A stretch of DNA of 64,000 bases from NCBI GenBank assembly GCA_028534125.1, contig CM052849.1, forward strand, positions 2,108,001 through 2,172,000, written 5' to 3'. Below are positions 1,518 to 62,853 of the stretch, piece after piece; the first letter of the stretch is position 1, and each line of letters opens with the position of its first letter. The notes beneath the pieces were generated by a model. That model did not search any database. It saw only the letters and a list, made by a program, of their open reading frames with translations, and was not told the DNA's origin. This stretch comes from Lama glama. Its lineage: Eukaryota. The position numbers were made by a program, and so were the translations under genes.

Positions 1518-2017
1518 NNNNNNNNNNNNNNNNNNNNNNNNNNNNNNNNNNNNNNNNNNNNNNNNNNNNNNNNNNNNNNNNNNNNNNNNNNNNNNNNNNN
1601 NNNNNNNNNNNNNNNNNNNNNNNNNNNNNNNNNNNNNNNNNNNNNNNNNNNNNNNNNNNNNNNNNNNNNNNNNNNNNNNNNNNNNNNNNNNNNNNNNNNN
1701 NNNNNNNNNNNNNNNNNNNNNNNNNNNNNNNNNNNNNNNNNNNNNNNNNNNNNNNNNNNNNNNNNNNNNNNNNNNNNNNNNNNNNNNNNNNNNNNNNNNN
1801 NNNNNNNNNNNNNNNNNNNNNNNNNNNNNNNNNNNNNNNNNNNNNNNNNNNNNNNNNNNNNNNNNNNNNNNNNNNNNNNNNNNNNNNNNNNNNNNNNNNN
1901 NNNNNNNNNNNNNNNNNNNNNNNNNNNNNNNNNNNNNNNNNNNNNNNNNNNNNNNNNNNNNNNNNNNNNNNNNNNNNNNNNNNNNNNNNNNNNNNNNNNN
2001 NNNNNNNNNNNNNNNNN
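1518..2017. other. Assembly gap (500 N), probably containing BCR exon 9
   Basis: Round-number N run. Exon 9 peptide (HRQLLKDSFMVELVEG...) not found elsewhere between exons 8 and 10. Confidence 0.9.
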
Positions 2018-12040: not shown

Positions 12041-12404
12041 TGTTACTATTGAACTGTGTCCCCTTGAAATTCACCTGCTGAAGCCCTCACCCCAGCACCT
12101 CAGAATGTGCCTGTACTTGGAGATGGGCCTAAAGAGATGACTAGGTTAAAAGACACCGCTGGAGTGGGCGCTCATCCACTCTGACTGGTGCCCTTACAAG
12201 GAGAAGAGATTAGGACACAGACACAGAGGGACGACCACGTGAGACACAGGGAGACGACGGCCCTCTACACGCCAAGGAGAGGGGCCTCGGGAGAAACCGG
12301 CTCTGCAGACACCTTGATCTCAGACTTCCAGCCTCCAGAACCAGGAAGAAATAGGTCTCTGTTGTTGGAGAGGCTGGGACCGCCGCAGCCTTAGTAAACG
12401 AACA
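12041..12404 (+). mobile_element. MaLR solo LTR (MLT1A/B-like)
   Basis: gaactgtgtcccc...cctcagaatgtg...gacaccttgatctcagacttccagcctccagaac hallmark blocks. Confidence 0.8.
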
Positions 12405-16934: not shown

Positions 16935-17560
16935 TGTGATGGTGTTACCGGTGCAGTGTGTCCCTGGTGCCTCAGGACGTCACTGTACTCAGAGACAGGG
17001 TCTTTAGACAAGTAATTATGTTAAAACGAAATCATTAGAGTGGACCCTAGTCCAACGTGTCTGGTGTCCTGCTAAGAAAAGATTAGGTACAAACGTCCAG
17101 TTATAGAGCAAGTCAGTCCTGGGACATCCTGTACAGCTGGTGACGACAGCTCATAACGCTGCATCGTATAAATGAAAGCTGCTAGGAGAGTAGATCTTAA
17201 GTGTTCTCATCACAAGATAAAAATTTTGTAACTATCATGGAGTTGGATATTAACTAGACTTACACTTAGTGATCATTTTTCAATGTGTACATATATTGAA
17301 TCATCGTTTGTCCACCCGAGACTAATGTAATGTTATAAGTCAGTATCTCAACATAAAAAAGAAGAGGAGATTAGGACACAGACACGCATAGGGGAAGACA
17401 CAGGGAAAGGACGGGCACCAAGGAGAGAAGCCTCAAGAGAAACCAACCCTGCAGACATCTAGATCTTGGACGTCCAGCCTCCAACACCGGGAGAGCTCAA
17501 TCTGTGTTGTTTAATGCCCTCTCCATGGCACACTGTTACAGACGCCTGGGAAACCATGAC
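16935..17560 (+). mobile_element. MLT1-like LTR interrupted by an L1 3' end (17088-17361)
   Basis: MLT1 blocks on both sides of an AT-rich L1MA-type 3' end with A tail; degenerate TSD. Confidence 0.75.
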
Positions 17561-22530: not shown

Positions 22531-22639
22531 TGGGGGTTTTTTTGGGGGGGGGTAATCAGGTTTGTTTATTTAATGGTGGTACTGGGGGTTGAACCCAGGA
22601 CCTCATGCATGCTAAGCACACACTCTGGCACTGTACCCA
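22531..22639 (-). mobile_element. tRNA-derived SINE (camelid Vic-1-like)
   Basis: Reverse strand reads ...gcttagcatgcatgaggtcctgggttcaacccccagtaccaccattaaataaacaaacctgattacccccccc plus an A-rich tail; B-box GGTTCAA present. Confidence 0.8.
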
Positions 22640-24699: not shown

Positions 24700-25268
24700 C
24701 CTTCAAAAAATTAAACTGAGAATGACTACACGATCCAGCAATCCCACTTCTGGGCATGCATTCAAGGAAACTGAAAGCAGGGACCGGAAGAGTTATTTGC
24801 ACACCAACGTTCACAGCAGCATTACTCACAACAACCAAATGATGGCAGCAACCCACGCATCCATTGATGGATGAATGGGCCAGTCTATCCGTCCAGCAGA
24901 ATATCACTCAGCTTTAGAAAGGGAGGACACTCCAACACGTGCCAGACCACGGAGGAACCTCGAGGACGCTGTGCTCAGTGAGCCGGGCCAGTGACAGAAG
25001 GGCAGATGCACTCCAGCACTGCACTGAGATGGGGTCCCCAGAGCAGGCAAATTCACAGACACAGCAAGTGGGACAGGGGCTCCGGGGGGCTGGGGCTGGG
25101 AGGGAATGGAGCTACTGATTAACGGGGACAGAGTTTGGGTTTGGGAAGATGAAAGGAGATCCGGAGATGGATGGTGGGGATGGTTGCACAACAATGTGAA
25201 TGTGGTTAACGCCACTGCACTGCACACTTACAAGGATAAAAATGGTCCATTTTATGTTACGTATACAG
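24700..25268 (+). mobile_element. L1M (L1MB-like) 3' fragment
   Basis: gatccagcaatcccacttctggg...ttcacagcagcatt...gatggttgcacaacaatgtgaatgt...gccactg. Confidence 0.8.
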
Positions 25269-30700: not shown

Positions 30701-32123
30701 GGGGTGACAAGCCAGCCTCTAGCCAACACCCACTCTGGCCCCAGGGAGTCAGCCCCCAGGCATGTAGCCCCTCAGTCTTCAGGGCAAGGCCCTCTGGGAT
30801 GCCCCTCCCTGAAAAATCTGACACCCGAGCATGTGGGCCTGGACGTTTACACCCTCCCTGCTCTGTGGGAAGGGCCCCTTCATCAGAGAAGCCACTTCCC
30901 GGTGGTTTACGCCCAGTTATACCCAGAGGGCATGGGGGCGGCAGGGTTGCTTCCAGGGAACTCAGAGCCAGAGACCTAAGAGGTGGACCAGGAACGGTGC
31001 CTCCACCCTGAAGCCCACTCTGCGCCAGCCCCCTGCAGCGCAGGCCCCACCGCGGCGGGGAAAGCAGGAGCATCAGGTATAAGGCCCTGCAGGGCTGGGA
31101 AACACACTGCGGGCCTTGTCATCCACCGTCTCCCCGCCTCCCCCACTGCGTGCATGGCTCTGGGCTACGCCAGGCATGGTCCCCGCAGCCCGTCCAGCCC
31201 AGGCTCGCGGTCAGGGGCCCAGCGCTCCTGCTTGCTGCCCAGGCTGCCTCCTCCCTTTGCTCCCGCAGGCTCCCCCCTCCTCCCCGCAGCCCGGTGGACT
31301 GGGCCCCCAACACTCTCCAGCCTGGGCCCTGGCACACTCTCTCCATCCAGGTGGCCTCCTTGGGCCTCTAAGACCAACCAGGTCTTCACAGTCCAGCCCT
31401 CCCCAGTGTGACTGTACCTGATACCACACCTCTGCCAGGGTTTCAAGACACCTGAGGGGAGCGTGGGCTAGGCTCACTTCTGAGTCACAAAATTCAACAG
31501 TGATTTTTTTGGGTCACTGACAGCCTAGAGAGCCTCTGGCATCTGCCCAGGGGCCCCATGTGTCCACAGCCCTGGCTGGCACACCTCATGCAGCAGGTGA
31601 AGTCACCGTGCCTCCCAGGGTCCAGGAGTGGAGGCACTGACGGGGAGGGGAGCAGGAACCCACCACGTGCACACATGGAGCCAGCACTTGACACACGGCA
31701 TTGAAGTCGGCCTCGTGTTTTGGGAAAGCGGAAAAAAAAAGCAACGATGGTGTCTTTTCTGTTTTCAAACAAGAACAGCCTGTCGCCACCGGGCAGAGAA
31801 TCGTCTGTGCCAAGAGAAGGATGGCGGGGGAGGCGCCTGCATGGGCTGCTCAGAGCACACTTCAAGAAGCAAGCATCTATCTAAGTGGGAGCCGGGCGCA
31901 CATGGGCCTGCAGGAGGCTCCGATGAAGGCACTCCGCTCTGCTCAGAGATGTCAGGGGTCCCGGGAGACCACAGCAGGTGCAGAGGAGCCCCATGGGAGA
32001 TCTCCCACCAGATCCCGGTGATCCAGAAAAAGGCTTCTCTCTGAGGCTCTGGACCCAGGTTCAGGCTGAAACCCTCTAAGCGGATCTCCATCCCTTGACA
32101 TTCTCCCTGTCCTTACAGAGAAG

Positions 32124-32198
32124 CACGTGTGTGCATGTACATGAGTGTGCACAAGGGCATGTGTGTGCAGGCATGTGCATGTGTGTGAGGCACGTGCA
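32124..32198. repeat. Imperfect (TG/CA) alternating purine-pyrimidine tract
   Basis: cacgtgtgtgcatgtacatgagtgtgcac...; similar tracts at ~18448-18502 and ~36230-36278. Confidence 0.7.
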
Positions 32199-32564
32199 CC
32201 TACCACAGGGAGCCTCACCCAGCTCCTCAGGCCGGCAGCTCCTGCTTGTGGTCACCAAATTCATGCAGGACAGACGCCCCCTGGCCTGGCCCCACCACGT
32301 GAACCTCACTCTTGAGTTCATGGTGGCACTTGTGTCCCTCTCATCTGCCATCCTCTCCTTGAGGCTGAGGCAGGACGGGGCCATGCATGCACATCAGGGG
32401 GTGCTTGCTGACCGGCCAGAGGGACACAGAGCTGGCAAATGGCCGAGCTGGGCTACAACCTCCCTCCCGGTCAGGCCCCACTGCCCCCAGGCACTAGACT
32501 CTACAGGTGGCAGGATGGTCGCCCCACACTGGCTGTACCCAAGTGGCTGATTTGGGGCAGAGCA

Positions 32565-32662
32565 GAACTTGGCTCCAATCCAGTGGCACCACTGCCCAGC
32601 TGGGTGACCTTGGCAAGTTACTCTGTCTCTCTGGGCCCCGGGCTTCTCATCAATAAAAGAGG
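32565..32662 (+). mobile_element. MIR SINE core fragment
   Basis: agctgggtgaccttggcaagttact...tctctgggcc...ttctcatcaataaaa. Confidence 0.65.
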
Positions 32663-34295
32663 ATTCAGCTGGTCCGCTGGCCGCACATCCCGAGGAGGAG
32701 GTGCTGGGCACCACACTTGGCAAGGCAGCATCCAAGAAGGCGCCTGCCCAGGGGCCCTGGGGGCCTGTGTCCTCAGCCTAGCTGGGCCAGGACTCGGAGA
32801 TCAGCAGACACTGTCTTTGCCTGAGCACTGGGTCTCGAGGCTTCCAAGTGTTGGAGGGCGACATAAAATTGGGGCATTGTGCTGAGGTCTGAATATGTCG
32901 GGAGCAAGTCCCTGGGAGGGGAGGGGAGGCTGGAGAAGTCAGGGCAGCGTGCAGGGGATGAAGGCCTTTGGACAGGCTGAGGGCGCCCCAGGGAGCAGGT
33001 GGGTCAGGCACGGCCCAGAGGGAACCAGGAAAGGCTGAGAAAGAGAGTGGGAAGACACCAAAGACTCACTCACTCACCTGCGACTTCCCTCCCCAACCTG
33101 CAGCTCTAGCCTGGGCTGATTCTCCCTCTGATAATGGAGCATAAATGTGGGAGTGGGCCCGGGTGGGGACATAACTCACGGGCCATGTGCTCCACCAGCC
33201 TGGCCAGATGGTGCAGGCAGCCTGAGCATCCAGGGAAGCGTGCACTGCCCATTCCTGCTGGATTCCAGGCCTGCTAAGTGTGGCAGTGGGAGGGGGGCGA
33301 GGAGACCACAACCAGCTGAGACTCCACACAAGGCCGCCCGAGCCCACAGGGGCCTCCCGACGCTGCAGCTCTGTCCAGCACACGCTGCTGTCCCTTGACG
33401 GCAGGGCAGCTGGGGAACCATCTCAGATATAAAGCCCCCTTCCCGAGGCACCTACGAGCCGGGCTGTTAGAGACCTCAATGCTCACCCCAGCACAGCCCT
33501 GAACATTCCTACATCACTCCCCTCTGACCAAAGGGAGAACAGACGCACAGAGGAACCATCACCTGCCCGAGGCCATCCGCCCCGTCAGATGGTCTTGGAC
33601 ACTGTGCTCCCCACCCCACCCACAGCCCCCACCTCAGAGAAGCAGGAACCCCATACTGCGCTGGGGCACATGCCACGGAGGAACGCTATGCGTCCAGGAC
33701 AACTGCAGGGGGTGGCGCTCTAGGGAATGACAGCTGGATGTGGGGCTGGGGAGGGGGCGGCTGGGAAGGCAGGCCCGGCACGCAGGACAACTTCTGGGAT
33801 CCTCCGGCTGGGAATCCCCAGATGGGCAAAGGTCTCCACGCCTCGGTGGCCTGAAGCCTTTCTCTCCTCTGGAAATAAGGGCGGGAATTTCAACACGCAG
33901 ACAGCTGTAGCCACTCCGCGAGGACTTCTGAGCCAGGCCATGGAAATTGACAGAGGAGCCCGCAGCAGAGCAGGGACAGGGCAAACCAGGGTATGCAGCC
34001 GAGAAGACCAGGGAGGCAGAGAGGTGCTACCCAGCATCACAAGCTAGTGGCTGCGGGACACGGTCAGGGGTCCCGAGGGCCGGCCTGAACCTGCCGTGTG
34101 AGCGTCGGCTGGGCCAGGCTCAGGGATTTGAGGAGCGGCTGCAGTGACCAGCACCCTCAGAACAGTGTCCAGGGACAGCGGTCAGCCCACGGGGCACCGC
34201 CACACACAAGAGAGGAGGTTCACAGGCAGAAGCGTGAGCTCCCAGTTCCAGGGGAGGTGGAGAAACACACCACTCTTCCCTGCTCACCACAACTA

Positions 34296-34420
34296 AGATT
34301 TCTGGACAAATCACATGAAGTAGCCGTCTTGGGGCTCTGAGAGGCAGACACGAGCAGGAGGGCGGCGTAGGGATCTCACGACTCGAGGCATGTCCTGGCA
34401 GTGACTTCTTTGGTGTTTTG
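34296..34420 (+). repeat. Inverted repeat, arm A (partner 37956-38062)
   Basis: agatttctggacaaatcacatgaagtagccgtct(t)ggggctctgagaggcagacacgagc...gtagggat...cctggcagtgacttctttggt equals the reverse complement of arm B. Confidence 0.95.
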
Positions 34421-34653
34421 GTTTTTTTCACTGTTACTATTTTTTGCTTTTGTTTAAATGTGTTACGATTGATGGAGACTGATTTCCTCTCAGTGGAACC
34501 GGCTGCGGACCCCACCTACGTGCTCCTAACCACTCACAGGGCTGACAAGGGAAAGGAAACCCAAGGCCGACAGAGGCTCAGCACAGCAGGCATGAGGAAC
34601 TCATGTTGGTCCAGCCTTCCAGAAGATTCCTTCAGTTCAAGAACCATCCCAGT

Positions 34654-34735
34654 GGAGGGGGTGGGGGTACAGCTCAGTGGTAGAGTGTGTACTTACGCAT
34701 GCACCAGGTCCTGGGTTCAATCCCCAGTACCTCCA

Positions 34736-34774
<39 letters not shown>

Positions 34775-34797
34775 ATCAAAGAACAAAATAACCAAAA
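34654..34797 (+). mobile_element. tRNA-derived SINE (Vic-1-like) with (CA)n/A-rich tail
   Basis: A-box cagctcagtggtagag, B-box gggttcaatccc. Degenerate TSD aagaaccatcccag (34639-34652) / aggaactatcccag (34798-34811). Confidence 0.85.
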
Positions 34798-35816
34798 AGG
34801 AACTATCCCAGAGACCAAACGTCCAATAACTCATGGACTTGAACCTTCTCGGGCTCAGCGCTGCTGGGATCTGATCAGTAAATGATTTGGGGGCCATCCT
34901 GGGAGGAGAGCTACTGAATCAGAAAGGTGGCACGGCTGTGCTCCAGAGCCAAAGAGGCCAGTGCTGGTCACCAGGCAGCTGAAAACCCAAGCACTGAAGA
35001 TACACCTGAAAACGGTTTATCTTTCCCAAACCTCTACCCAGATGGGACTTCCTCACACTCCCCTGATGGCTTTTCCGTGTTTAACCAAGCTTGCACACAA
35101 GATGCTCTTCCTCCTGTCCCTCAGGGCAGCTCAGATGCTGGCTGACTCCCCGTTCTTCCTGTGAGGGCCGGACCACAGGGCACCGCGCTCCAGTGGCTCC
35201 CTCCCTGCTTGTGGGCTGAGTGATGCATTCTTGGCGCCTCTGCTGGCAGGAGAGACACCACCAGGGCTGTTTTGGGACTGAACATGTTGACAGCACCCAC
35301 TGCGGTGCCTGGCACGCGGCCGACGCGGAGAGTGGTGGACACCAACAGCAAGTGGCCCCTTCAGTCCAAGTCCCCGGGCTGCCCAGACTCCACTTCAAAT
35401 ACTTCCCGCAAGGCTCTGCTTTCTAACTTTTGAATCACTCAGTGTGTTCAGGCAGCTCAGGGTTCATGTCATTTTTGGCTTTGTGGGAATTTTTTAACCT
35501 CCAAGTGAAGCTGTATTCACAGCAGGCGGCTCCCTCTTCAAAAGGATTCTGTCACAGGCACACATGCATGGCCACCTCCAAGTCACTGCCGGCTCCATCC
35601 TGGGCCTGGTCTCCAAGCCGAGTCGAACTTCACTCTCTCCCCAAACCTAAATCTCAGGTCCTAGTTCTTCTGGTCCCTTCCAGGTGGAATTGAGGGAGCT
35701 CGCATTTCATATTAAACCTAATTTAAAAGTTAAAACTGCCAGAGATGAAACTCTGGACACGCTCCAAAGGAGATGCTATTCCGGGGCCTCTCCACCTCTG
35801 CATTTTATCCTAAACC

Positions 35817-36026
35817 CGGGGTCAGCTACCTTGGTTCTGCAAAGAGCCAGCTAGTAAATATTTTTAGCTTTTCAAGCCATGTGCTATCTGTCACAATTAC
35901 TCAGCCTCACCATCACCAAGCAAAAGCAGCTATATGTTTGGCAGGGACTGAACGTGCAGTGTTCCAATAAAACTTTATTTACAAAAGCAAGCGGGGGTCC
36001 AGATCAAGCTGTAATTTGCTGACCCC
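35817..36026. mobile_element. MER58A-like hAT-Charlie MITE
   Basis: Terminal inverted ends ggggtcagc...gctgacccc; internal gtgttccaataaaactttatttacaaaa. Confidence 0.8.
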
Positions 36027-37955
36027 AGCCTCCATAACAGGGAGAGGCCCACCACCGCCTTCCTCTCCTCGGTTTCAGAACCTGGCTGTTTCCTGCCACC
36101 ACCATGGACCTGGAAATTTGTTACGCAGCTTGGGAACCTCTTTCTTCATCTCTGCCAAGAACCCATCAGCATAGGTGACACCGTAAGACAAAAAGAATTT
36201 CTCAGCTCCCTTCACATGTGGCACCAGTAACACACGCATGTGCTCACACACACGCACACACACGCGCATGCACACACTCTTACAGAAGAATGACTCTGGC
36301 TCCTGTGGGAAGAATATTTCCAGAGGGAGAAAACACACCAGTCACAGCAGAAAGTATGAGCCAGGGCCTTGATTCATTCGTAATAGCGATTGTGCTGGAA
36401 AACAGCACAGGACACTTGAAGGAAATGAATCATTTATGGAGCCCAAGGAGGAGGTTGGCAGGATTTCTCAGGAGACGCCCCACCCAGCCCCGCCTGGAGG
36501 AGGGAGCCCCACGAGGAAGGAGAGCAGGATGTGGGCAGCGAGTCTGCCAGGCTGGGAGAGCATGTTTGCATAGGTTTTATCTGCCTGGTTCCAAAACGAT
36601 TTGAGGCAGCCTTCAGACATTAAACAGCATGAAATAAGACCGCTGGGAAGAAGACAAAAACAAAGGCCCAAAGAGTGTCTGAGGTTCCTGGATGCGTGAA
36701 CCAGGCCAACTGAACACAGCCTGGCCCCCGAGCCTCCTGATGGCAAAGGCTGGAAAGGTGGATGAGTCTGAGTAATGGCTGCAGTCGGGGGGGCAGGGGA
36801 GCTGGGGTGCAGGACGACAGGGGCTGGCAGTCAGTCGCTCACTGTGGGCTCCATAGCCCTGCAATTCTACCCCACCCCCCGATTTGCTGGAGCAGATGCT
36901 GCCAGAGGTAGAAAAGGAGGAACAAGCCCAGATCACCTTGGCTTCCTCCAGACCCACAGGGATTTCCCCCAAATCAAAGTCCCAAACAGCCGCCAGCACA
37001 GAGGGGCAGGAGGGCACTCAGGCCATGCCTTCTGAGTCCCAGGGCGTGACAGCCCGGAGTGGGAGCCCCACAATCCCGTGTGCAGCCAGTGGTCTTGGCT
37101 TCGGCAGAGCCCGCGCCCTGCACCTGGCCTGGCCAGCCTGCCGCGGGCGGGGTCTGAGAAGCAGGGTGGGGTCCAAAGAGTGAGTGGGCCCAAAAGTGCA
37201 CAGAGAGGAGGTCCCCAAATAATCACCCTGTGCGCTGCCCTGGGCTCGGGTGGCATCCTCCGTCCAGGGCTCCCCGGGTTGGGCGTCCTCTGGACGTCCC
37301 CAGAAACAGTGCAGCCCCAAACTGCTTCTCCCTTGGAACAGGAAGCATGTGTCTCGGGGAAGCCGATCTCAGCCCTGCCGGAGGCAGGCTCAGGCACACC
37401 CTCCCATGCCCTGCCCAGCGCTGCCGACCGCCACAATGTCCTTGACCGTGGTGCTGCAGGCAGGTCACCCTGATGTCCCCCTGAACATTCTACAAAGAGC
37501 TCTGAGAACAGTTAGCCAAGTCAACAGCATAAACACCACCTCTAAGGCAGCCCTCCGGACAGCAGAGCCCTGAGGACCAGAGGGGTGGCCCTGGGGCAGC
37601 GGGAGTGACCACTGCCAGGCAGCCACGGTCGGGTCGGTGCCAAGGGACCCGCGCCCACGCCTGTCTTCCTGTTGTGGAGTCAGTGCTGCATTTGCCGCTT
37701 CAGCACCAGCTTCCTCTCGACCGCGTGGAAAGGAGAGATAAGCGGCCGACATAAGGGCACTCCTGTCACTCCCCGGGCACCAGGGCCTCTGCCCGTGGGA
37801 AAGGCAGGGCAGGCCGCGCTCGGGGGCCAGCGGAGGAAGCGGAGGCGTGCCCAGTGCTGGCGCTGCAGTGGGAGGGGGCAGAGCCCCCGTCCTCTCTGTG
37901 CGGGGAGGCTGGGGGAACCACGTCAATGGGGGCCTAGAAACAAAACGTGGAATCT

Positions 37956-38062
37956 CAGAAAACCAAAGAAGTCACTGCCAGGCTATCCCTACCCCAACCC
38001 TCCGCTCGTGTCTGCCTCTCAGAGCCCCAGACGGCTACTTCATGTGATTTGTCCAGAAATCT
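37956..38062 (-). repeat. Inverted repeat, arm B (partner 34296-34420)
   Basis: See arm A. Also visible in the ORF track as the shared peptide RFLDKSHEVAV on opposite strands. Confidence 0.95.
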
Positions 38063-41000
38063 CCTTTGGACTCCCTTGGTCACACTGCTAGGTGGTCCCC
38101 CTTCTCCTGCTCTACGGAAAGACATGGACCAGAGACCCAGAGGGATGGAGGTCAGGCAGGAACCCGCCCAGGTACCCACCCTGCCTCCGCCCGAAGGGAA
38201 GGCTCCGGCTCCTGAACCCAGCATCCCTGCCCTGATGGTCCGGCTTCAGCCTTTCTGTTCTGTTCACTCAACACACCGCCAGGCAGGGCCGTTAGCCACC
38301 CTCTCCTGCCTGGGCCGTGTCTTCCTGCACCCTCGGCCCTCTGCCAAGTCCCACCCTCCTTAACATCCAGGAAATCGCCACCCTCTACCTGCGCTGGAAC
38401 AGCCCCTTGGTCTGAGCTTTCCCAGCCCCCAGCATTTGGGCAATTTACTGACAGTCACAGAACGCTTCCCATCGTATGCTGTGAACTATCACTTTACTTC
38501 TCATCTTAATTCTTAAATATTTCTGCTCCACCCTGGAAACTGCCCATACCAAGGCTGTCTGTGCTGTACTGTGCCTTGGAGGGGACCCTAGACAAGATGG
38601 GCAGGAGTGTCCTCCCTTCCCTCTGCAAACAGCAAGTGAGCACCTATTTTGTGCCCCAAAATGCCCTGGTGATGGGGACACGGGAGTGAACACAACATAC
38701 AGTGACTGCAGGCCCTGGGGAGCTTGCTCTGGAGGGAGACCAACAGGAGGGACAGGTACGGGGACACCTGACAAGTGGTGTCACTTTTCACAACAAAGAT
38801 GACTTCTCTACTCACAAAAACTGGCTCTTGAAGGCAGAAAATCTAGTAAACCCAACTGGGAAAACAAAAGTCATATTCACCACCAACTGGGGATCTGTCC
38901 TGAGTCTTAAGAAATAAAGTTTCCTTCATCCTGGAAGTGAGATCCCTGAAGATCTGACTGGAGCTGGGACTTTCCTTGAGAAGCACTGAGAAACATGGGT
39001 GCCCCCATCTGACCTCTGCGTTCAGCAAGAAGGTGGGTGAAAGGACCCTCCCCAGGTCCTACAGAGCCCCCCCACCGGCTCCTAGCTCTGAGCCCATCAT
39101 CCGGAACCCCTCCTGTGAAGACATCTCCCATTTGCCCTGGTCTGGGGGAGGCAGTGTCTGCAGAAGCAGAAGCAGAACCACCATCTTCGCTACTGTCAGA
39201 GAGAAGTGGGGTGAAGACGAGAAGGGGAGAAGCAGCGGGAGGACCAGGCAGGGGACAGAACCCGCTGGGGGAGCCGGGAAACAGTCCCCCACAGTTCCTC
39301 TGCGGGGCAAAGGGTTGTCCTTAGATGAGAGCATCAGAACCCGGGGAGTGAGCAGGTTGTCCTGTATCTGCATCTCAATTCTCCAATAAGAAAGGAAGCA
39401 AATCATGGATACGAAATCCTCGTGCATTGGGAAGAGTGAAATATTGCAGCCAAAACAACCCTGGTTCACTGTCAAGGCCGCAGAAGCAGGAGGTGAAGAT
39501 AAGATAATATGAGTCCGTTAGAGTGAGACACTCAACCCAAGGAAGCCTCGTCTGCGCAGACCCTGCTCCACCGTCAACGGGCAGTGATGGTGCCAACAGG
39601 GGACTCCATGCTCCAGAAGGCGGGGCAGTGCCTGTATGAGCACCAAAGAGCCTGGACAATGCATGAAGGTGGCATGAGTGAGGGGCTGGGAAGGTCAGAA
39701 GGAGAGGTCAAGGGGCAGAGAGGGACATGGGGTGGGACAAAGGAGGCTCGTGGACAAAGTGGCATCAGAGCTGGGCCTCGGGGACACATGGATCTGGGCA
39801 GGTGGCGACACATGGGGGGGTGTTCCAGGCGAAGAGATGGGGTGCAGAACACACCAGGGAGTAAGATCTCATAACTAGTGGGGAGGAGGAGGTTCTGCTC
39901 CCACCGCAGCACCCTCGAGGGTGGGAAGAGGAGTGGGGGTGGTCCTGCAGGCCTGCCTGCCTGGGAAGAGCAGAGGACACGACTGGGAAGACACTCTGGA
40001 GTGTACACTGGCTGGTCCAGGGAGCAGCAGGGTGAGCCGGGGGGCAGGAAGGTCACAGTCAAGGTGGGGGTCAGTGTGGCCTGATGGGGTCCACACGGGG
40101 CTGGTTTGGAGGCACAGTGGGGAGACAGCATCTAACAGCAGGGACAGGCCTTGAAGATGACCCCACCCCCCGACCGCCCTGCCCACAACCAAGTGTCTTC
40201 AACTTTTTGCCGACTCACTGGATGTCCAGCCTTGAAGCTGGACCACTGGAAGATGCCCCCCCACGAGGGGCAGCTATGGGTTTACGCTCTCCACTTCTTC
40301 ACTTTCTCCCTTCCCCCTGGATTAGTTTTAAAAGATTAGGTTTCCTGTTTCCACTGTCAGGCTGGCTGGGCCCTCTGTCCATCCATCCACCATCAAGGCC
40401 ATCAGGGCAGCGGCAGGGCAGGGGCGGGCTGGCACGCTCCCGACCAGCCAGCTCCCCGCCCTGCACCAGCTGGACTCTGTAAACACCACTTCCTCCCGAG
40501 CAGGGCCGAGCTGCGACCTCTCCCACCGGCAAGGGGCCTCTTAATGGAACAAGTAAATAGGCGATTCATCCTAGCTGCTGACAGCCACTCACCCTCGGAG
40601 CTGGCGCGGTCCAGGGCAGAGAAAACAGCCCTGTTGGTGGGGCCCCTCCGCCTCCCTTCCCAATCCCTCCCCCATCGGTGGGGCCTGGACCTCGGCCTGG
40701 ATGCTCTGGGCTGGAAGTGCCGGGTCCCACTCTGAGGACCGGGGTCCATCACACCTGTCCAGCCCCTGTGACCTGAGCTGTAGGCACACTGTCAGGATGA
40801 CTCCCAGCCACCTCCACCCCAGACACGCTGCAGGGCTGACAGCCAGTCTCGGGGGCCCACTTATGCACCAGCTGCCAAGAGAACCAGACCACACCGTGGG
40901 GTCATCCCTGAGAACAGGAGGGCCTGAGGCTGGGCCTTCTCAGCTGTTCAGGCACTACGGCAGCCTCCAAGGTGGGGGCCAAGCCAGGACAATGTGGGGC

Positions 41001-43739: not shown

Positions 43740-44135
43740 GCAGCCAGGAGGCAGAAACAATACAAGTGTCCACTGATGGATGAGTGGTTGAGCAAAATGT
43801 GGTCTATTCATACAAAGGAACATGGTTCAGCCTTAAAAAGGAAGATATTCTGACACCTGCTACAATGTGGACGCACCCTGAATACTACGCTAAGTGAAAT
43901 AAGCCAGACACAAAAAGACAAATACTGTAGGAGTCTACTTATGTGAAGTGCCTGCAGTAGTAAAATTCATTGAGTAAGAAAGCAGAATAGGGGTGCCAGG
44001 GGCTGCGGGGGAGTGAGGGGTTAGTGTTTAGTGGGGACAGAGTTTCCGGAGGATGAAAAGTTGGGGAGTCAGATGGTGGTGATGGTTGCACAACAAGGCC
44101 GACGTGCCCAATGCCACCAAACCATCACTTCAGAT
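43740..44135 (+). mobile_element. L1MB-like 3' fragment
   Basis: tgtccactgatggatgagtgg...gctaagtgaaataagccagacacaaaaagacaaatactg...gatggtggtgatggttgcacaac. Confidence 0.8.
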
Positions 44136-47410: not shown

Positions 47411-47501
47411 AGGGAGGGTACAGCTCAGTGGTAGAGCACATGCTTAGCATGCACGAGGTCCTGGGTTCAATCCCCAGTACCTGCAGTAAAAGAAAAAAAA
47501 A
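47411..47501 (+). mobile_element. tRNA-derived SINE (Vic-1-like)
   Basis: gggagggtacagctcagtggtagagcacatgcttagcatgcacgaggtcctgggttcaatccccagtacc followed by poly(A). Confidence 0.85.
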
Positions 47502-47806: not shown

Positions 47807-47952
47807 NNNNNNNNNNNNNNNNNNNNNNNNNNNNNNNNNNNNNNNNNNNNNNNNNNNNNNNNNNNNNNNNNNNNNNNNNNNNNNNNNNNNNNNNNNNNNN
47901 NNNNNNNNNNNNNNNNNNNNNNNNNNNNNNNNNNNNNNNNNNNNNNNNNNNN
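47807..47952. other. Assembly gap (146 N) inside an L1 fragment
   Basis: N run with L1-like sequence on both sides. Confidence 0.95.
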
Positions 47953-48251
47953 CAAAAGGACAAACCCTGCAGGATCCCACCTAAGCGAGGTCTCTGCAGG
48001 GGCCAAAGCAGAGAGCGGTCATCAGGGACCAGGAGAGGGAACATGGGGGAGCCCTGGTTTCATGGGGACAGCTTCGGTTTGGGAAGATGAAGGGTTTGGG
48101 GGCAGATGGTGGAGACGGTTGCACAGCAGCGTGAATGTACCTAATGCCACTAAACTGCATGAATTGAAGTTCTGGAGGCTTCAGATGCACAAACTGATGG
48201 GTAAATGGGTGGATGGATAGATGGATGTATGGATGCATGGATGACGAACGG

Positions 48252-50899: not shown

Positions 50900-51800
50900 T
50901 GTAAAATCAAGGGTAAACAGGAACAGCATTTCTGGAGAGTAATTTGATGACAAATATCAAGGGTCTTATAACCATCCAGATCTCTGATTTGGTAACTCTA
51001 CTGACCAACACTCACTTTCAAGGAGGAAGCAGAAATGCGAATGGAAATGGATGTAAAAAGAGGAGATGCTCACAAAATGCGATGAACGCCACTGAACTGT
51101 AACCTGAAACAAAATGTGGTCCAAACAAACAGTGGAATATTATTCAGCCGTAAAAGGGGGGACATTCTGACACATGCTATGACATGGATGAACGCTGAAG
51201 ACATTATGCTCCGTGAAATAAGATAGGAATACTGTGTAAGTCTACCTAAGCGAGGTACCCAGAGCAGTCAAATTTATAGAGACAGAAAGTAGGGATGGTG
51301 GCTGCCAGGGGCTGGGGGAGTTACTGCTGAAAGGGCACAGAGTTTCAGTTTCACAAGATGAAAGGAGTGCTGGAGATGGTGGTGATGGTTGCACAACAAT
51401 GTAAACATACCATCACAAAAAAACGCTTATTTATGGTAAGTCACATATATATGTATATGTAAAACCGTGATTTTTAAAAGTTAATAATGCAATGTACCAA
51501 CACCCATCAAACTGTACATTTTAAATGCAAATTGTATGGTATGTACATCATACCTCAGTGAAGCTTTCTTTTTTAAAAATAGATGCTCACTGAAACATTG
51601 TAATAACCAGCTACATTTAGTAAACATTAAATGTCCAACAAAATTCATCAAAATTAGATCAATTAAACCATAACTCCTCTATGCAGTAATAATGTAGCCT
51701 TTAAAAAACATTTACAAAATATTCAGTAAAACAGAAAAATGATCCCATTCATCGACAAAAGCAGGACACCCAAGTACGCAGTGAGATCTCAGCTACATAA
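50900..51800 (+). mobile_element. AT-rich L1M fragments (core L1MB-like at ~51105-51480)
   Basis: gtggaatattattcagccgtaaaagg...acatggatgaac...gatggtggtgatggttgcacaacaatgt. Confidence 0.7.
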
Positions 51801-54189: not shown

Positions 54190-54450
54190 AAGTCACTGTG
54201 CTCAGTGACACAAGCCGGACGCAAAAGAACAAGTGCCGTGAGTCCACTCCTGCGAGGCCCCCGGAGCAGACGCACAGGGACAGCAAGGACAGTGGTCCTG
54301 CTAGGGGCTGGGGGAGGGGGGGGTTACTGCCTAACAGGGCCAGGCTTTCAGTGGGGAAACAGCAAGGTTCTGGAGATGGATGGAGGTGATGGTTGCACAG
54401 CAAAGTGAATGCACTTAATGCCACTGAGCTGGACGCTTCAAATGGTGAAG
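54190..54450 (+). mobile_element. L1MB-like 3' fragment
   Basis: ttctggagatggatggaggtgatggttgcacagcaaagtgaatgcacttaatgccactga. Confidence 0.7.
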
Positions 54451-57177: not shown

Positions 57178-57495
57178 CTGTGGGCTGACCTGTGTCCCCC
57201 TCGAAATTCACATGTCGAGGTCTTAGCCTCCAGCACCTCAGAACAGGACTGTGTGGAGGTGAGGGTTTAAAGAGTTAAGTTAAAACAGGGTCATCAGAGT
57301 GGGCCCTAAACCAATCTGAACTGTGTCTTTATAAGAGATCTTAGGCACACACATGTCACCAGGGGTCCACCTGCACAGAGGAATGACCAGGTGAAGGGGC
57401 AGCGGGGTGGGGAGGGGGGGATCTACACGCCAAGGATAGAGGCCTCTGGGGAAACCAACCCTGCTGGCACCTCGATCTTGGACTTCCAGCCTGAG
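57178..57495 (+). mobile_element. MaLR LTR (MLT1-like), 3' truncated
   Basis: tgtgtccccctcgaaattcacatgt...gaaaccaaccctgctggcacctcgatcttggacttccagcct. Confidence 0.75.
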
Positions 57496-57619: not shown

Positions 57620-57960
57620 GAGAATGCTGCCCCTGGCAACGGCAGCTTCAAAACCCTCCGTGAGTGAGATCAGCCAGACACACAGGACAGCTAGTACCTG
57701 CTTCCAGGTACCTGGGGTACGTAGGACAAGTAAATTCATGGGGTCGGAACGCAGAACCAGTTGCCGGGGGCTGGGGGCAAGGGCAGGTGCATTATCGCGT
57801 AATAGATACAGAGTTTCTCATCAGAAAGATGCAAAGTTCTGGAGATAGTGATGGTTGCACAACAACATGACTGCACTGAATGCCACTGAGCTGGACGCTG
57901 AAAAATGGTAAAAATGCCGCCTTTGGTTACATGTATTTTACCACGATAAAGAAAATCCTA
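57620..57960 (+). mobile_element. L1MB-like 3' fragment
   Basis: agttctggagatagtgatggttgcacaacaac...aatgccactga...tgtattttaccacgataaa. Confidence 0.7.
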
Positions 57961-60900: not shown

Positions 60901-61547
60901 GATAAAATCTTCAACCCCGGCGATCTTTTGTGGCCCACTGAGTCAGACCTGCCTGTCACCTATCTTCCTTCTAATTCGCATTTTCACCTGCTCTGACTTG
61001 CACTGGGGCTGCTAGCTCACCAGTGAACCTGACACTCTTAAGGCCTGGGAGCAGCTGGCACATCTTGGATTCACCAAAAGTGTCACATAACTCTTCTAGG
61101 TCAAGTGATGGGGAATGCCCAAGACACAGATCAATCCCAGCTGAAAACATCCACCTAGGTGGCAGAGCTGACCCCTTCTTTATACCATCCCAACTGCCCG
61201 GGGTGGAAGTATCAGTGGGCAAGATGACGACTGCCCAGGGCATCCTGGTCCTGACCCACAGAGAGGACTCTCACAAGAAGCACATGGCTCTGGAACCAAA
61301 GAAATGAGCTGCTTACCATCCCCACACATCACCCCTCCCAACCCATCTCATTCCAAGCACTGGGAATTTGCATTCAGGAGGAAAGCAGGATGGAGTTTGT
61401 TCAGGCACAGGGGCAGCATGAATCAGTTCACAACAGTATCTGAAAATCACTCCCCAAAGTGTCCACTTATTCCTCCCTGTAGTCCCTCCTGCTCAGTGGT
61501 TTCCAGCCAGGGGCAGGTGTGCCTACCAAGGGGGTGGAGGTACCCAC

Positions 61548-62853
61548 CTGCGTCTCCATGGAAGGTGCCATCCTGAGGCACCCTGCTCGACAAACTGTCC
61601 CCATCGTTGGGCCAGATCTGCCCAGTCTTGCGGACGCCCACGATGGTGGCCTCGGACACGACCACCTGGCCCTGCCGGTGCCGCTTCTGGCACTGCGGCG
61701 TCGGGGGGCTGCTGCTGTCAAAGGACTGCTGGGAGTTCTGCGAGGGCGAGCGGCTCTTGTCTCGGAATATGCGGTAGGTGGTGGGGCTCGGGGACACGCG
61801 GCTGGACTGGCCCGAGGAGAAGTCCTCCTCGCTGGAGGTGAGGTTCTCGTTGGAGCTGCAGTCTGGCGTGTAGCCGCCTCCGCTGTCCTCAAAGCTCCGA
61901 GGGGAGTAGGACCTGCGGGGCCAGGTAAGGCGCTTCTCCTGCTCCGAAGTGCTCTGGCTGCGCTGGAGTGGGCCCTTGCCCTCCCCTTCCACCATCATGC
62001 CCCCGACGTAGATGCTCTGGTAGGGCTGGTACTCCAGGGGCGGCCAGGGAGGCCTGCCGCCGCCGTCGGCGTTGATCAGGTTGTCCTTCAGGAAGCGCGG
62101 GTTCAGCTCGGCGTCCTCATAGTCGCCGTCGAGGCCGCAGCTGCTCTCGGAGGCGCGCCCGCGGTAGGGGGGCCTGGGCGCATCCCCCGGGCCGGGCCCG
62201 GCGCCCTGCTGGGACCTCTTGCGCTCCATCTGCATGGCCTGGGTTCCCAGGGAGCTGATGCGGTCCGAGACGTCTTTGTCGTTGACCTTCACCAGGCCGC
62301 GCTCGTGGTGGAACTCGACGTTCACATAGAAGGGCTTCTCGGCGTCCGCCGCCGCTGGCTGGCCCGGGCCCTTGCGGATCCTCTCGAAGTTGGAGCGCAG
62401 GGCCGCCACGCTGGTGGGGGGCCCCCGGTCGTCGCGGTCCGCGGGAGCAGCGGTCCCGGGCCTGCGAGCGGCCGCGGGCCTGGCTTTACCCGGGGAACCC
62501 TCTCCATCTGGCCGGGACTCGGACTCGTCGGTGGGCGGAGGGTCGGCACCGTCGGCGGGCGCGGGCTGGGGGCGCGGAGCGCGGGGCTCTGGGGCGCCGT
62601 CGGGGGGCTGAGCGGCGCGCCGGAAGCCCCAGCGCTGCCGGTCGTAGCTCTTCTTCTCCTTGGCCAGCAGCGTCTGCAGGTAGATCATGCGGAAGCGCTC
62701 CTGGTTCACCTCCTGCTCCAGGCGCCGGATGGAGGCCTTGCAACGCTCTAGCTCCTGCTCGATGTCGCCCACCGAGCGCAGCTCCATGCGCGGCGGCTCC
62801 GAGTCCGGGAACTGCGCCTTCCACGCCTCGGCGAAGCCCACCGGGTCCACCAT
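61548..62853 (-). CDS. BCR: BCR coding exon 1 (435 codons + 1 nt): N-terminal oligomerisation coiled-coil, Grb2-binding YVNV motif, Ser-rich/atypical kinase region
   Basis: Translation MVDPVGFAEAWKAQFPDSEPPRMELRSVGDIEQELERCKASIRRLEQEVNQERFRMIYLQTLLAKEKK... is the BCR N-terminus. Strong Kozak (gccATGG). YVNV tyrosine codon at 62326-62328 (Y176, human Y177 equivalent). Ends FHGDA-G at donor GCAG|gtgggt (phase 1). Confidence 0.99.

What the first reader, a model, noticed from the sequence alone, without database searches (positions are those of the whole stretch)
34296..38062. Near-perfect ~100-bp inverted repeat of apparently unique sequence in BCR intron 1, enclosing a 3.5-kb loop: candidate long-range pre-mRNA duplex
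Seen: arm A (34296-34420) is the reverse complement of arm B (37956-38062). The match is 34 perfect nt, a 1-nt bulge, 25 perfect nt, a 1-nt bulge, 6 nt, a short mismatched patch, 8 nt (gtagggat), a ~17-nt one-sided insertion, then 21 perfect nt. That is about 95 paired bases, and the differences are mostly indels rather than substitutions. The arms resemble no SINE/LINE/LTR I recognise and have no flanking TSD. The loop contains an ancient MER58A and no transposase, so this is not a recent DNA transposon. One mismatch reads as a G-U wobble on the BCR sense strand but C-A on the other (single case, weak). Established: intronic duplexes of this length are ADAR substrates and can loop out intron segments or alter splicing. 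Inference: either a selected RNA structure in BCR pre-mRNA, or an inverted duplication kept homogeneous by gene conversion that could also invert the 3.5-kb spacer.
Basis: partly seen in the sequence, partly recalled or inferred. Interest (0 to 1): 0.8.

Follow-up and report, generated by a model that had tools for sequence, protein, structure and literature searches.

The report
Local inverted duplication in BCR intron
A piece of unique DNA about 110-125 bases long occurs twice, in opposite orientation and 3.5 kb apart, inside the first intron of the BCR gene of a non-human mammal; it looks like an ordinary copying accident, and nothing found here shows that it is a selected RNA structure.

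Summary
Arm A (34296-34420) is the reverse complement of arm B (37956-38062), with 102 of 126 columns matching (E about 1e-25 to 3e-28). These are the only two copies in the 64-kb window. BCR exon 1 lies at 61447-62853 on the minus strand, so both arms are in intron 1.

I found no sign of selection on an RNA structure:
- The duplex is equally stable on both strands (-194 against -190 kcal/mol).
- The two transition differences give one wobble on each strand.
- The differences between the arms are CpG changes and indels, as in neutral decay.

There is no target-site duplication, no transposase and no further homology. The 3.5-kb spacer has the same transcription-type strand asymmetry as the rest of the intron (T-A skew -0.09 against -0.10 +/- 0.05). 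This indicates it was not inverted recently.

My best reading is a young, neutral, copy-and-paste inverted duplication made by a replication or repair template switch. It would incidentally give a roughly 100-bp duplex in BCR pre-mRNA.

Three things were not tested: genome-wide copy number, other species and RNA editing.

The parts
34296..34420 (.). Arm A of the inverted duplication (125 nt). In BCR sense RNA (minus strand) it is the downstream, 3' arm.
34375..34393 (.). One-sided indel: arm A carries 17 nt more than arm B here. It is predicted to bulge out of the duplex.
34421..37955 (.). 3535-nt spacer. This is native intron DNA in its long-term orientation: + strand T-A skew -0.093 and G-C skew -0.038, both typical of the intron. 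It has no long ORF and no Pfam domain. Places 35834-35872 were barred and left out of all searches.
34650..34775 (+). tRNA-derived SINE copy with an (AC)16 tail inside the spacer. It is not part of the duplication and has two relatives elsewhere in the window.
37956..38062 (.). Arm B of the inverted duplication (107 nt). In BCR sense RNA it is the upstream, 5' arm.
61447..62853 (-). Context: an open frame that holds the BCR exon 1 coding sequence and runs on past the exon's end into the intron. It sets the gene's strand and places the arms at least 23.4-27.2 kb into intron 1.

Best explanation
I read this as a young, lineage-specific, selectively neutral local inverted duplication. About 110-125 nt of unique intron DNA was copied in reverse-complement orientation to a site 3.5 kb away, without turning the DNA in between. 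The most likely cause is a template switch during replication or break repair, the class that creates an inverted repeat with an uninverted spacer. The two copies have since drifted apart by CpG changes, three 1-nt indels and one 17-nt indel. As a by-product, BCR pre-mRNA and any antisense transcript can close a 3.5-kb loop with a duplex of about 100 bp, which ADAR may edit. Shown here: the repeat, its limits, its uniqueness within the window, its position in BCR intron 1, and the lack of transposon marks. The native orientation of the spacer is supported indirectly, by composition. Inferred: the mechanism, the age (roughly 5-20 million years from 2-4% substitutions, if there has been no gene conversion and at mammalian neutral rates quoted from memory) and the neutrality.
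For: Only two copies exist in 64 kb, and the edges are sharp. No TSD is seen on reading, and no direct repeats flank the arms. The 10 longest of the 25 spacer ORFs of 70 aa or more (the longest is 167 aa) have no Pfam domain; the one match is below threshold, E = 0.019. Rfam finds nothing on the arms. Spacer orientation: the intron shows a strong transcription-type asymmetry on the + strand. The T-A skew is -0.104 +/- 0.047 in 182 tiles of spacer size taken outside the unit, with a maximum of +0.009. The spacer has -0.093, or -0.074 without the SINE. In 500-nt bins the log-likelihood ratio for 'collinear' over 'inverted' is about 14 nats from T-A skew and 2 from G-C skew. There is no strand preference of the duplex. 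The differences between the arms sit on CpGs and are indels. Template switching that creates inverted repeats without spacer inversion is a described mutation class in primate genomes, and it can create RNA hairpins without selection (PMC5453318; PMC8794818). First-stage notes list many other inverted duplications in this genome, several of them of unique DNA (unchecked leads).
Against: No outgroup sequence could be compared, so the ancestral state (one arm, collinear spacer) is inferred and not seen. Genome-wide copy number of the arm is unknown. The described short template-switch events are tens of bases long and local; a copy of about 110 nt placed 3.5 kb away is at the large end, nearer to the FoSTeS/MMBIR type of event. 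Microhomology at the junctions is unconvincing (AG at the outer edge, a T-rich fade at the inner edge). The skew test treats bins as independent and assumes that the asymmetry re-equilibrates slowly. An old inverted repeat kept alike by gene conversion would look the same.
Confidence: 0.55

Rival explanations
1. The arms are two members, or the two ends, of a low- to medium-copy dispersed repeat such as a short non-autonomous DNA element or an LTR or other fragment. In that case they either landed near each other by chance or mark the terminal inverted repeats of one 3.8-kb element.
For: The arms have similar limits at both ends, as full-length short elements would.
Against: There are only two copies in 64 kb. 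There is no TSD around the pair or around either arm alone, and no poly-A or A/B-box features. There is no transposase. The spacer carries the host intron's own strand asymmetry, so it is not foreign cargo. Identity of about 96% at aligned sites would need a family active in the last 10-20 million years. From memory, DNA transposons are long extinct in most mammals.
Confidence: 0.15
2. The repeat is an older inverted duplication whose arms are kept alike by occasional gene conversion. It is neutral or nearly so.
For: There are long perfect blocks (33 and 26 nt) next to a patch with clustered differences. That pattern can come from patchy conversion.
Against: The arms are short and interrupted by indels, which is poor substrate for conversion. 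The pattern is equally what a young duplication shows. Age could not be tested without outgroups.
Confidence: 0.1
3. A 3.5-kb inversion was made by staggered breaks, which duplicated the breakpoint sequence in inverted orientation at both ends (the model proposed for Drosophila inversions).
For: The anatomy fits exactly: inverted duplications of unique sequence at the two ends of a segment. The model is described in PMC1885836.
Against: The spacer's T-A and G-C skews match the surrounding intron in sign and size. Before a recent inversion it would have had a skew of +0.07 to +0.09, which none of 182 tiles of the intron reaches.
Confidence: 0.08
4. The repeat is a selected long-range RNA structure of BCR pre-mRNA that loops out 3.5 kb of intron 1 or recruits ADAR for a purpose.
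For: The duplex is very stable (-194 kcal/mol against -59 +/- 5 for a shuffled partner). It is part of the minimum-energy fold of the whole unit. It is the only long inverted pair in a repeat-poor intron. RNA-run contigs hold about a third of the 31-mers of the region, so the intron is seen in RNA.
Against: The duplex is equally stable on the antisense strand. Wobble differences split 1:1 between the strands. Bulges and a 17-nt indel have been tolerated. No exon or known element is enclosed. There is no comparative evidence of any kind. Any DNA-level inverted duplication gives the same picture.
Confidence: 0.05
5. The repeat is an assembly artefact.
For: None beyond the general possibility. 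The window holds two N runs, but they lie far away (1518-2017 and 47807-47952).
Against: Contigs of 14 DNA runs from 4 coded organisms and several studies hold 0.89-0.99 of the 31-mers of the 5.9-kb stretch, junctions included. The arms also differ by indels, unlike a collapsed or duplicated read.
Confidence: 0.02

Closest known systems
Template-switch mutations that create inverted repeats (four-point model, types 1-4-3-2 and 3-2-1-4; Loytynoja and Goldman 2017, PMC5453318; Monttinen and Loytynoja 2022, PMC8794818)
   Same: Nearby unique sequence is copied as its reverse complement, the spacer is left uninverted, and a ready-made RNA or DNA hairpin results without any selection.
   Different: The described events are mostly tens of bases long and very local. 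This copy is about 110-125 nt and lies 3.5 kb from its partner, closer in scale to replication-based FoSTeS/MMBIR rearrangements. The ancestral state was not seen here.
Inverted duplications at inversion breakpoints from staggered breaks (Ranz et al. 2007, PMC1885836)
   Same: Inverted duplicates of non-repetitive sequence bracket a segment.
   Different: That model requires the bracketed segment to be inverted. The strand composition of the spacer argues that it is not. The scale there is chromosomal, not 3.5 kb.
Inverted SINE pairs in introns as ADAR substrates (for example inverted Alu pairs; A-to-I editing surveys in other mammals such as PMC5823453 and PMC8659423, listed and not read in full)
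   Same: An intronic duplex of about 100 bp or more forms between arms a few kb apart. Hyper-editing is the expected outcome.
   Different: The arms are unique sequence and not a repeat family, so there is one partner only. Editing was not tested here.
Inverted repeats that mediate recurrent inversions by non-allelic homologous recombination (Aguado et al. 2014, PMC3961182)
   Same: The geometry is the same: inverted arms around a segment.
   Different: The examples quoted from that paper are long: duplications of 7 kb, a 782-bp tract at 99.9% identity, and highly identical repeats defined as at least 1 kb at 97% or more. Here the longest uninterrupted identity is 33-34 nt, so flipping is improbable.

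Membership tests
Template-switch local inverted duplication | Reverse-complement copy of nearby, otherwise unique sequence | tested here: met
   Two copies only in 64 kb, inverted, 3.5 kb apart. Uniqueness in the whole genome was not tested.
Template-switch local inverted duplication | Spacer between the copies not inverted | tested here: met
   Indirect. Spacer T-A skew is -0.093 and G-C skew -0.038, against an intron mean of -0.104 +/- 0.047 and -0.04. The log-likelihood ratio is about 16 nats for collinear.
Template-switch local inverted duplication | Ancestral or outgroup state with a single copy | not testable with these tools
   No mammal genomes are on hand.
Template-switch local inverted duplication | Microhomology at the switch points | tested here: inconclusive
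   AG is shared at the outer edge and a T-rich fade marks the inner edge. Donor and copy cannot be told apart.
Inversion with staggered breaks | Enclosed segment inverted relative to the ancestor | tested here: not met
   The strand asymmetry of the spacer equals that of the flanks. This is indirect, and outgroups are needed for proof.
DNA transposon with terminal inverted repeats | Target-site duplication flanking the inverted ends | tested here: not met
   Flanks are ...CACAACTA / CCTTTGGAC..., with no 2-10 nt duplication in any register.
DNA transposon with terminal inverted repeats | Transposase, or multiple copies in the genome | tested here: not met
   No ORF exceeds 167 aa, and the 10 longest spacer ORFs have no Pfam domain. 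There are no further copies in the window. The genome-wide count was not testable, and 35834-35872 was not scanned.
Conserved long-range pre-mRNA structure | Pairing kept across species with compensatory changes | not testable with these tools
   No orthologous sequences are available.
Conserved long-range pre-mRNA structure | Strand-specific signal: G-U tolerated on the transcribed strand and a better duplex there | tested here: not met
   -193.7 against -189.9 kcal/mol. One wobble on each strand.
ADAR substrate (intronic inverted-repeat dsRNA) | Long, nearly perfect intramolecular duplex in a transcribed region | tested here: met
   97 arm-to-arm pairs in the minimum-energy fold of the 3967-nt sense RNA. 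The arms lie in BCR intron 1. This is a prediction only.
ADAR substrate (intronic inverted-repeat dsRNA) | Clusters of A-to-G differences in RNA reads on the sense strand | not testable with these tools
Recombination-competent (NAHR) inverted repeat | Long uninterrupted identity between arms (a few hundred bp, from memory) | tested here: not met
   The longest perfect block is 33-34 nt.

The most novel reading that the evidence does not exclude
The duplication is lineage-specific, yet the roughly 100-bp duplex it created is used. It would close a 3.5-kb domain of BCR intron 1 in the pre-mRNA, be heavily edited by ADAR, and measurably change intron 1 processing or BCR output in this lineage. 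That would be a young, non-repeat-derived long-range RNA structure caught soon after its birth by template switching.
Probability: 0.05. Interest if true: 0.45.

Novelty: new member of a known kind. Interest (0 to 1): 0.2.

Why it matters
In itself it matters little. It is one more example of a mutation class that makes ready-made hairpins from unique DNA. Such cases show how long-range RNA duplexes can arise in one step without selection, so complementarity alone is not evidence of function. If many such unique-sequence inverted duplications in this genome prove real, as the scan's notes suggest, their size and distance spectrum could inform how far replication template switches reach in mammals. 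The position in BCR intron 1 has no demonstrated bearing on BCR biology.

Tried and rejected
1. Laying reads of three DNA runs and one RNA run on 33200-39100, to get depth over the arms (copy number), inversion joints and A-to-G clusters. In scripts those places were set to N or left out, the repeat finder was run beside them, and only ORFs clear of them went to Pfam.

2. Exact-word scans of metagenome contigs (two arm words) and viral contigs (two words) gave 0 hits. These collections hold little mammal DNA, so this says almost nothing about copy number.

3. The scan's own index, searched by sequence and by words, was blank, which per the operators means nothing.

4. Rfam on 32000-40500 found nothing on the arms, only the SINE's tRNA-like part and weak chance matches.

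5. I looked for extended, weaker homology beyond the arms and found none.

6. I looked for TSDs or direct repeats at the arm edges and found none.

7. I tried to tell donor from copy by arm composition. On the + strand arm B is C-rich and arm A is G-rich, and the intron is slightly C-rich. At about 110 nt this has no power, so I rejected it as evidence.

8. The CpG-island or promoter idea for the GC-rich end of the spacer (37000-38000): CpG observed/expected is 0.41-0.52, below the usual 0.6, so I did not pursue it.

9. I did not run the large protein searches. Nothing here is coding.
Full report
**Observation**

Reading the two stretches shows that 34296-34420 and 37956-38062 are reverse complements.
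- The repeat finder reports three gap-free blocks of 38, 45 and 35 nt, at 97, 87 and 86% complementarity.
- Gapped blastn joins them into one alignment of 126 columns with 102 matches. E is 3e-28 with the arm as query and 1e-25 in the window self-comparison.
- A local alignment gives perfect blocks of 33, 26, 6, 8 and 21 nt. Between them are three 1-nt indels, a short patch (CGGCG in arm A against TTGGGG in arm B) and a 17-nt excess in arm A at about 34375-34393.
- Neither arm has any other look-alike in the 64-kb window.
- No weaker homology continues on the same anti-diagonal for about 1.5 kb on either side. The duplicated unit therefore has sharp limits: 125 nt in arm A and 107 nt in arm B.
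- The window is repeat-poor, with 15 distinct self-matches. This is its only inverted pair of 80 or more columns with a spacer of up to 10 kb.

**Context**

The ORF at 61447-62853 on the minus strand begins MVDPVGFAEAWKAQF and matches Pfam Bcr-Abl_Oligo at E = 2e-40. The gene is therefore BCR, read on the minus strand, and the arms lie at least 23-27 kb into intron 1. In the sense RNA, arm B comes first and arm A follows 3.5 kb later.

Contigs of 14 DNA runs from four coded organisms hold 0.89-0.99 of the 31-mers of 33200-39100. The arrangement is therefore not private to one assembly. Those organisms are near-identical relatives and add no evolutionary depth. Three RNA runs hold about a third of the words, so the intron is seen in RNA. 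I could not locate those words within the stretch.

**What could not be done**

I therefore have no depth profile over the arms, no test for inversion joints and no test for A-to-G clusters.

- In scripts they were set to N or left out.
- The repeat finder was run beside them.
- Only ORFs clear of them went to Pfam.

No repeat library and no other mammal genome were on hand.

**Not a transposon, not an RNA gene**

- The flanks (...CACAACTA on the left, CCTTTGGAC... on the right) give no target-site duplication in any register, for the pair or for either arm alone.
- There are no direct repeats at the edges.
- The spacer has no ORF above 167 aa even with alternative start codons. The ten longest ORFs have no Pfam domain; the one match is sub-threshold at E = 0.019.
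- Rfam finds nothing on the arms. It finds only the tRNA-like part of a SINE at 34663-34735 and weak chance matches.

**Was the spacer inverted?**

Inverted duplicates of unique DNA at the two ends of a segment are the signature of an inversion made by staggered breaks (PMC1885836). I tested this indirectly, using strand composition.

The intron has a strong transcription-type strand asymmetry. On the + strand the T-A skew is negative in all 18 consecutive 3.5-kb pieces. In 182 tiles of spacer size taken outside the unit it averages -0.104 +/- 0.047, with a maximum of +0.009. The G-C skew averages about -0.04.

The spacer has a T-A skew of -0.093 (-0.074 without the SINE) and a G-C skew of -0.038, which puts it in the middle of the intron's distribution. 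Had it been turned recently, it would have carried +0.07 to +0.09 before the event, and no tile of the intron reaches that.

In 500-nt bins the log-likelihood ratio for 'collinear' over 'inverted' is about 14 nats from T-A skew and 2 from G-C skew. This figure is somewhat optimistic, because the bins are treated as independent.

I conclude that the spacer sits in the orientation in which it has long been transcribed. The event was a copy-and-paste of about 110-125 nt in reverse orientation, and not an inversion. The same result argues against the spacer being foreign cargo of a mobile element.

**RNA level**

- RNAduplex gives -193.7 kcal/mol for the BCR sense strand and -189.9 for the antisense strand. 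A shuffled partner gives -58.7 +/- 5.3.
- The minimum-energy fold of the whole 3967-nt unit contains 97 arm-to-arm pairs on the sense strand and 102 on the antisense strand.

The duplex should therefore form if kinetics and proteins allow. From established knowledge of ADAR, an intronic duplex of this length is a plausible editing substrate.

Nothing points to selection, however:
- The two strands are equivalent in duplex stability.
- Of the two transition differences, one is G-U on the sense strand and C-A on the antisense strand, and the other is the reverse (read). The other two substitutions are mismatches on both strands.
- Three bulges and a 17-nt loop have been tolerated.
- The substitutions in the core sit in a CpG patch.

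This is what neutral decay of a DNA duplication looks like.

**Mechanism and age**

Template switching during replication or repair is a described source of new inverted repeats with uninverted spacers in primate genomes; that type made up 31% of high-confidence events in a human-chimp comparison (PMC5453318). It is also a described source of RNA hairpins created without selection (PMC8794818).

The present case is larger and longer-range than those short events. It is closer in scale to the FoSTeS/MMBIR type of replication-based rearrangement (from memory).

With 2-4% substitutions between the arms, and mammalian neutral rates of about 1-2.2e-9 per site per year (from memory), the event would be roughly 5-20 million years old if there has been no gene conversion. 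This is an inference from very few sites.

Donor and copy cannot be told apart. Junction microhomology is unconvincing, and arm composition has no power at this length.

Flipping of the spacer by recombination between the arms is improbable. The longest perfect block is 33-34 nt, whereas the inversion-mediating repeats described in PMC3961182 are far longer.

**Other notes of the scan**

A look-up in this genome lists 63 first-stage notes on inverted duplications. Several are of unique DNA bracketing 1-9 kb. None carried a later check, and I did not test them. As a lead, they suggest a recurrent mutational class and not something special to BCR.

**Verdict**

The most likely explanation is an ordinary, young, neutral local inverted duplication (confidence 0.55).

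The main rivals are:
- membership in an unrecognised dispersed repeat family (0.15);
- an older repeat homogenised by gene conversion (0.10);
- a staggered-break inversion (0.08);
- a selected RNA structure (0.05).

Genome-wide copy number, outgroup state and RNA editing remain untested and would settle it.

Noticed in passing
window 1-61400: The whole of the BCR intron 1 part of the window shows a strong and uniform strand asymmetry. On the + strand the T-A skew is about -0.11 and the G-C skew about -0.04, and the T-A skew is negative in all 18 consecutive 3.5-kb pieces. This fits long-term transcription from the minus strand, and it is useful as an orientation marker for segments of a few kb.
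   Followed up: yes
window 34650-34775: A tRNA-derived SINE copy (Rfam tRNA 42 bits at 34663-34735) is followed by (AC)16. Related copies lie at about 22560-22633 (inverted) and 47416-47498.
   Followed up: partly
window 1518-2017 and 47807-47952: Two runs of N (500 and 146 letters). A 46-nt direct repeat at 95.7% identity (2018-2063 and 2111-2156) starts right at the edge of the first run. The runs were left as they are.
   Followed up: no
They were left out of all later searches.
   Followed up: no
window 12050-12366, 17359-17511, 25033-25229, 43793-44096, 48064-48159, 51110-51405, 54256-54449, 57186-57492, 57831-57912: Old dispersed repeat copies at 66-84% identity to each other are all in direct orientation relative to one another. 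This suggests an orientation bias of ancient repeats within this intron. The family was not identified.
   Followed up: no
window 36226-36285: A weak mir-297-like Rfam match (27 bits against a gathering score of 90) falls on CA/CG-rich low-complexity sequence. It is almost certainly chance.
   Followed up: no
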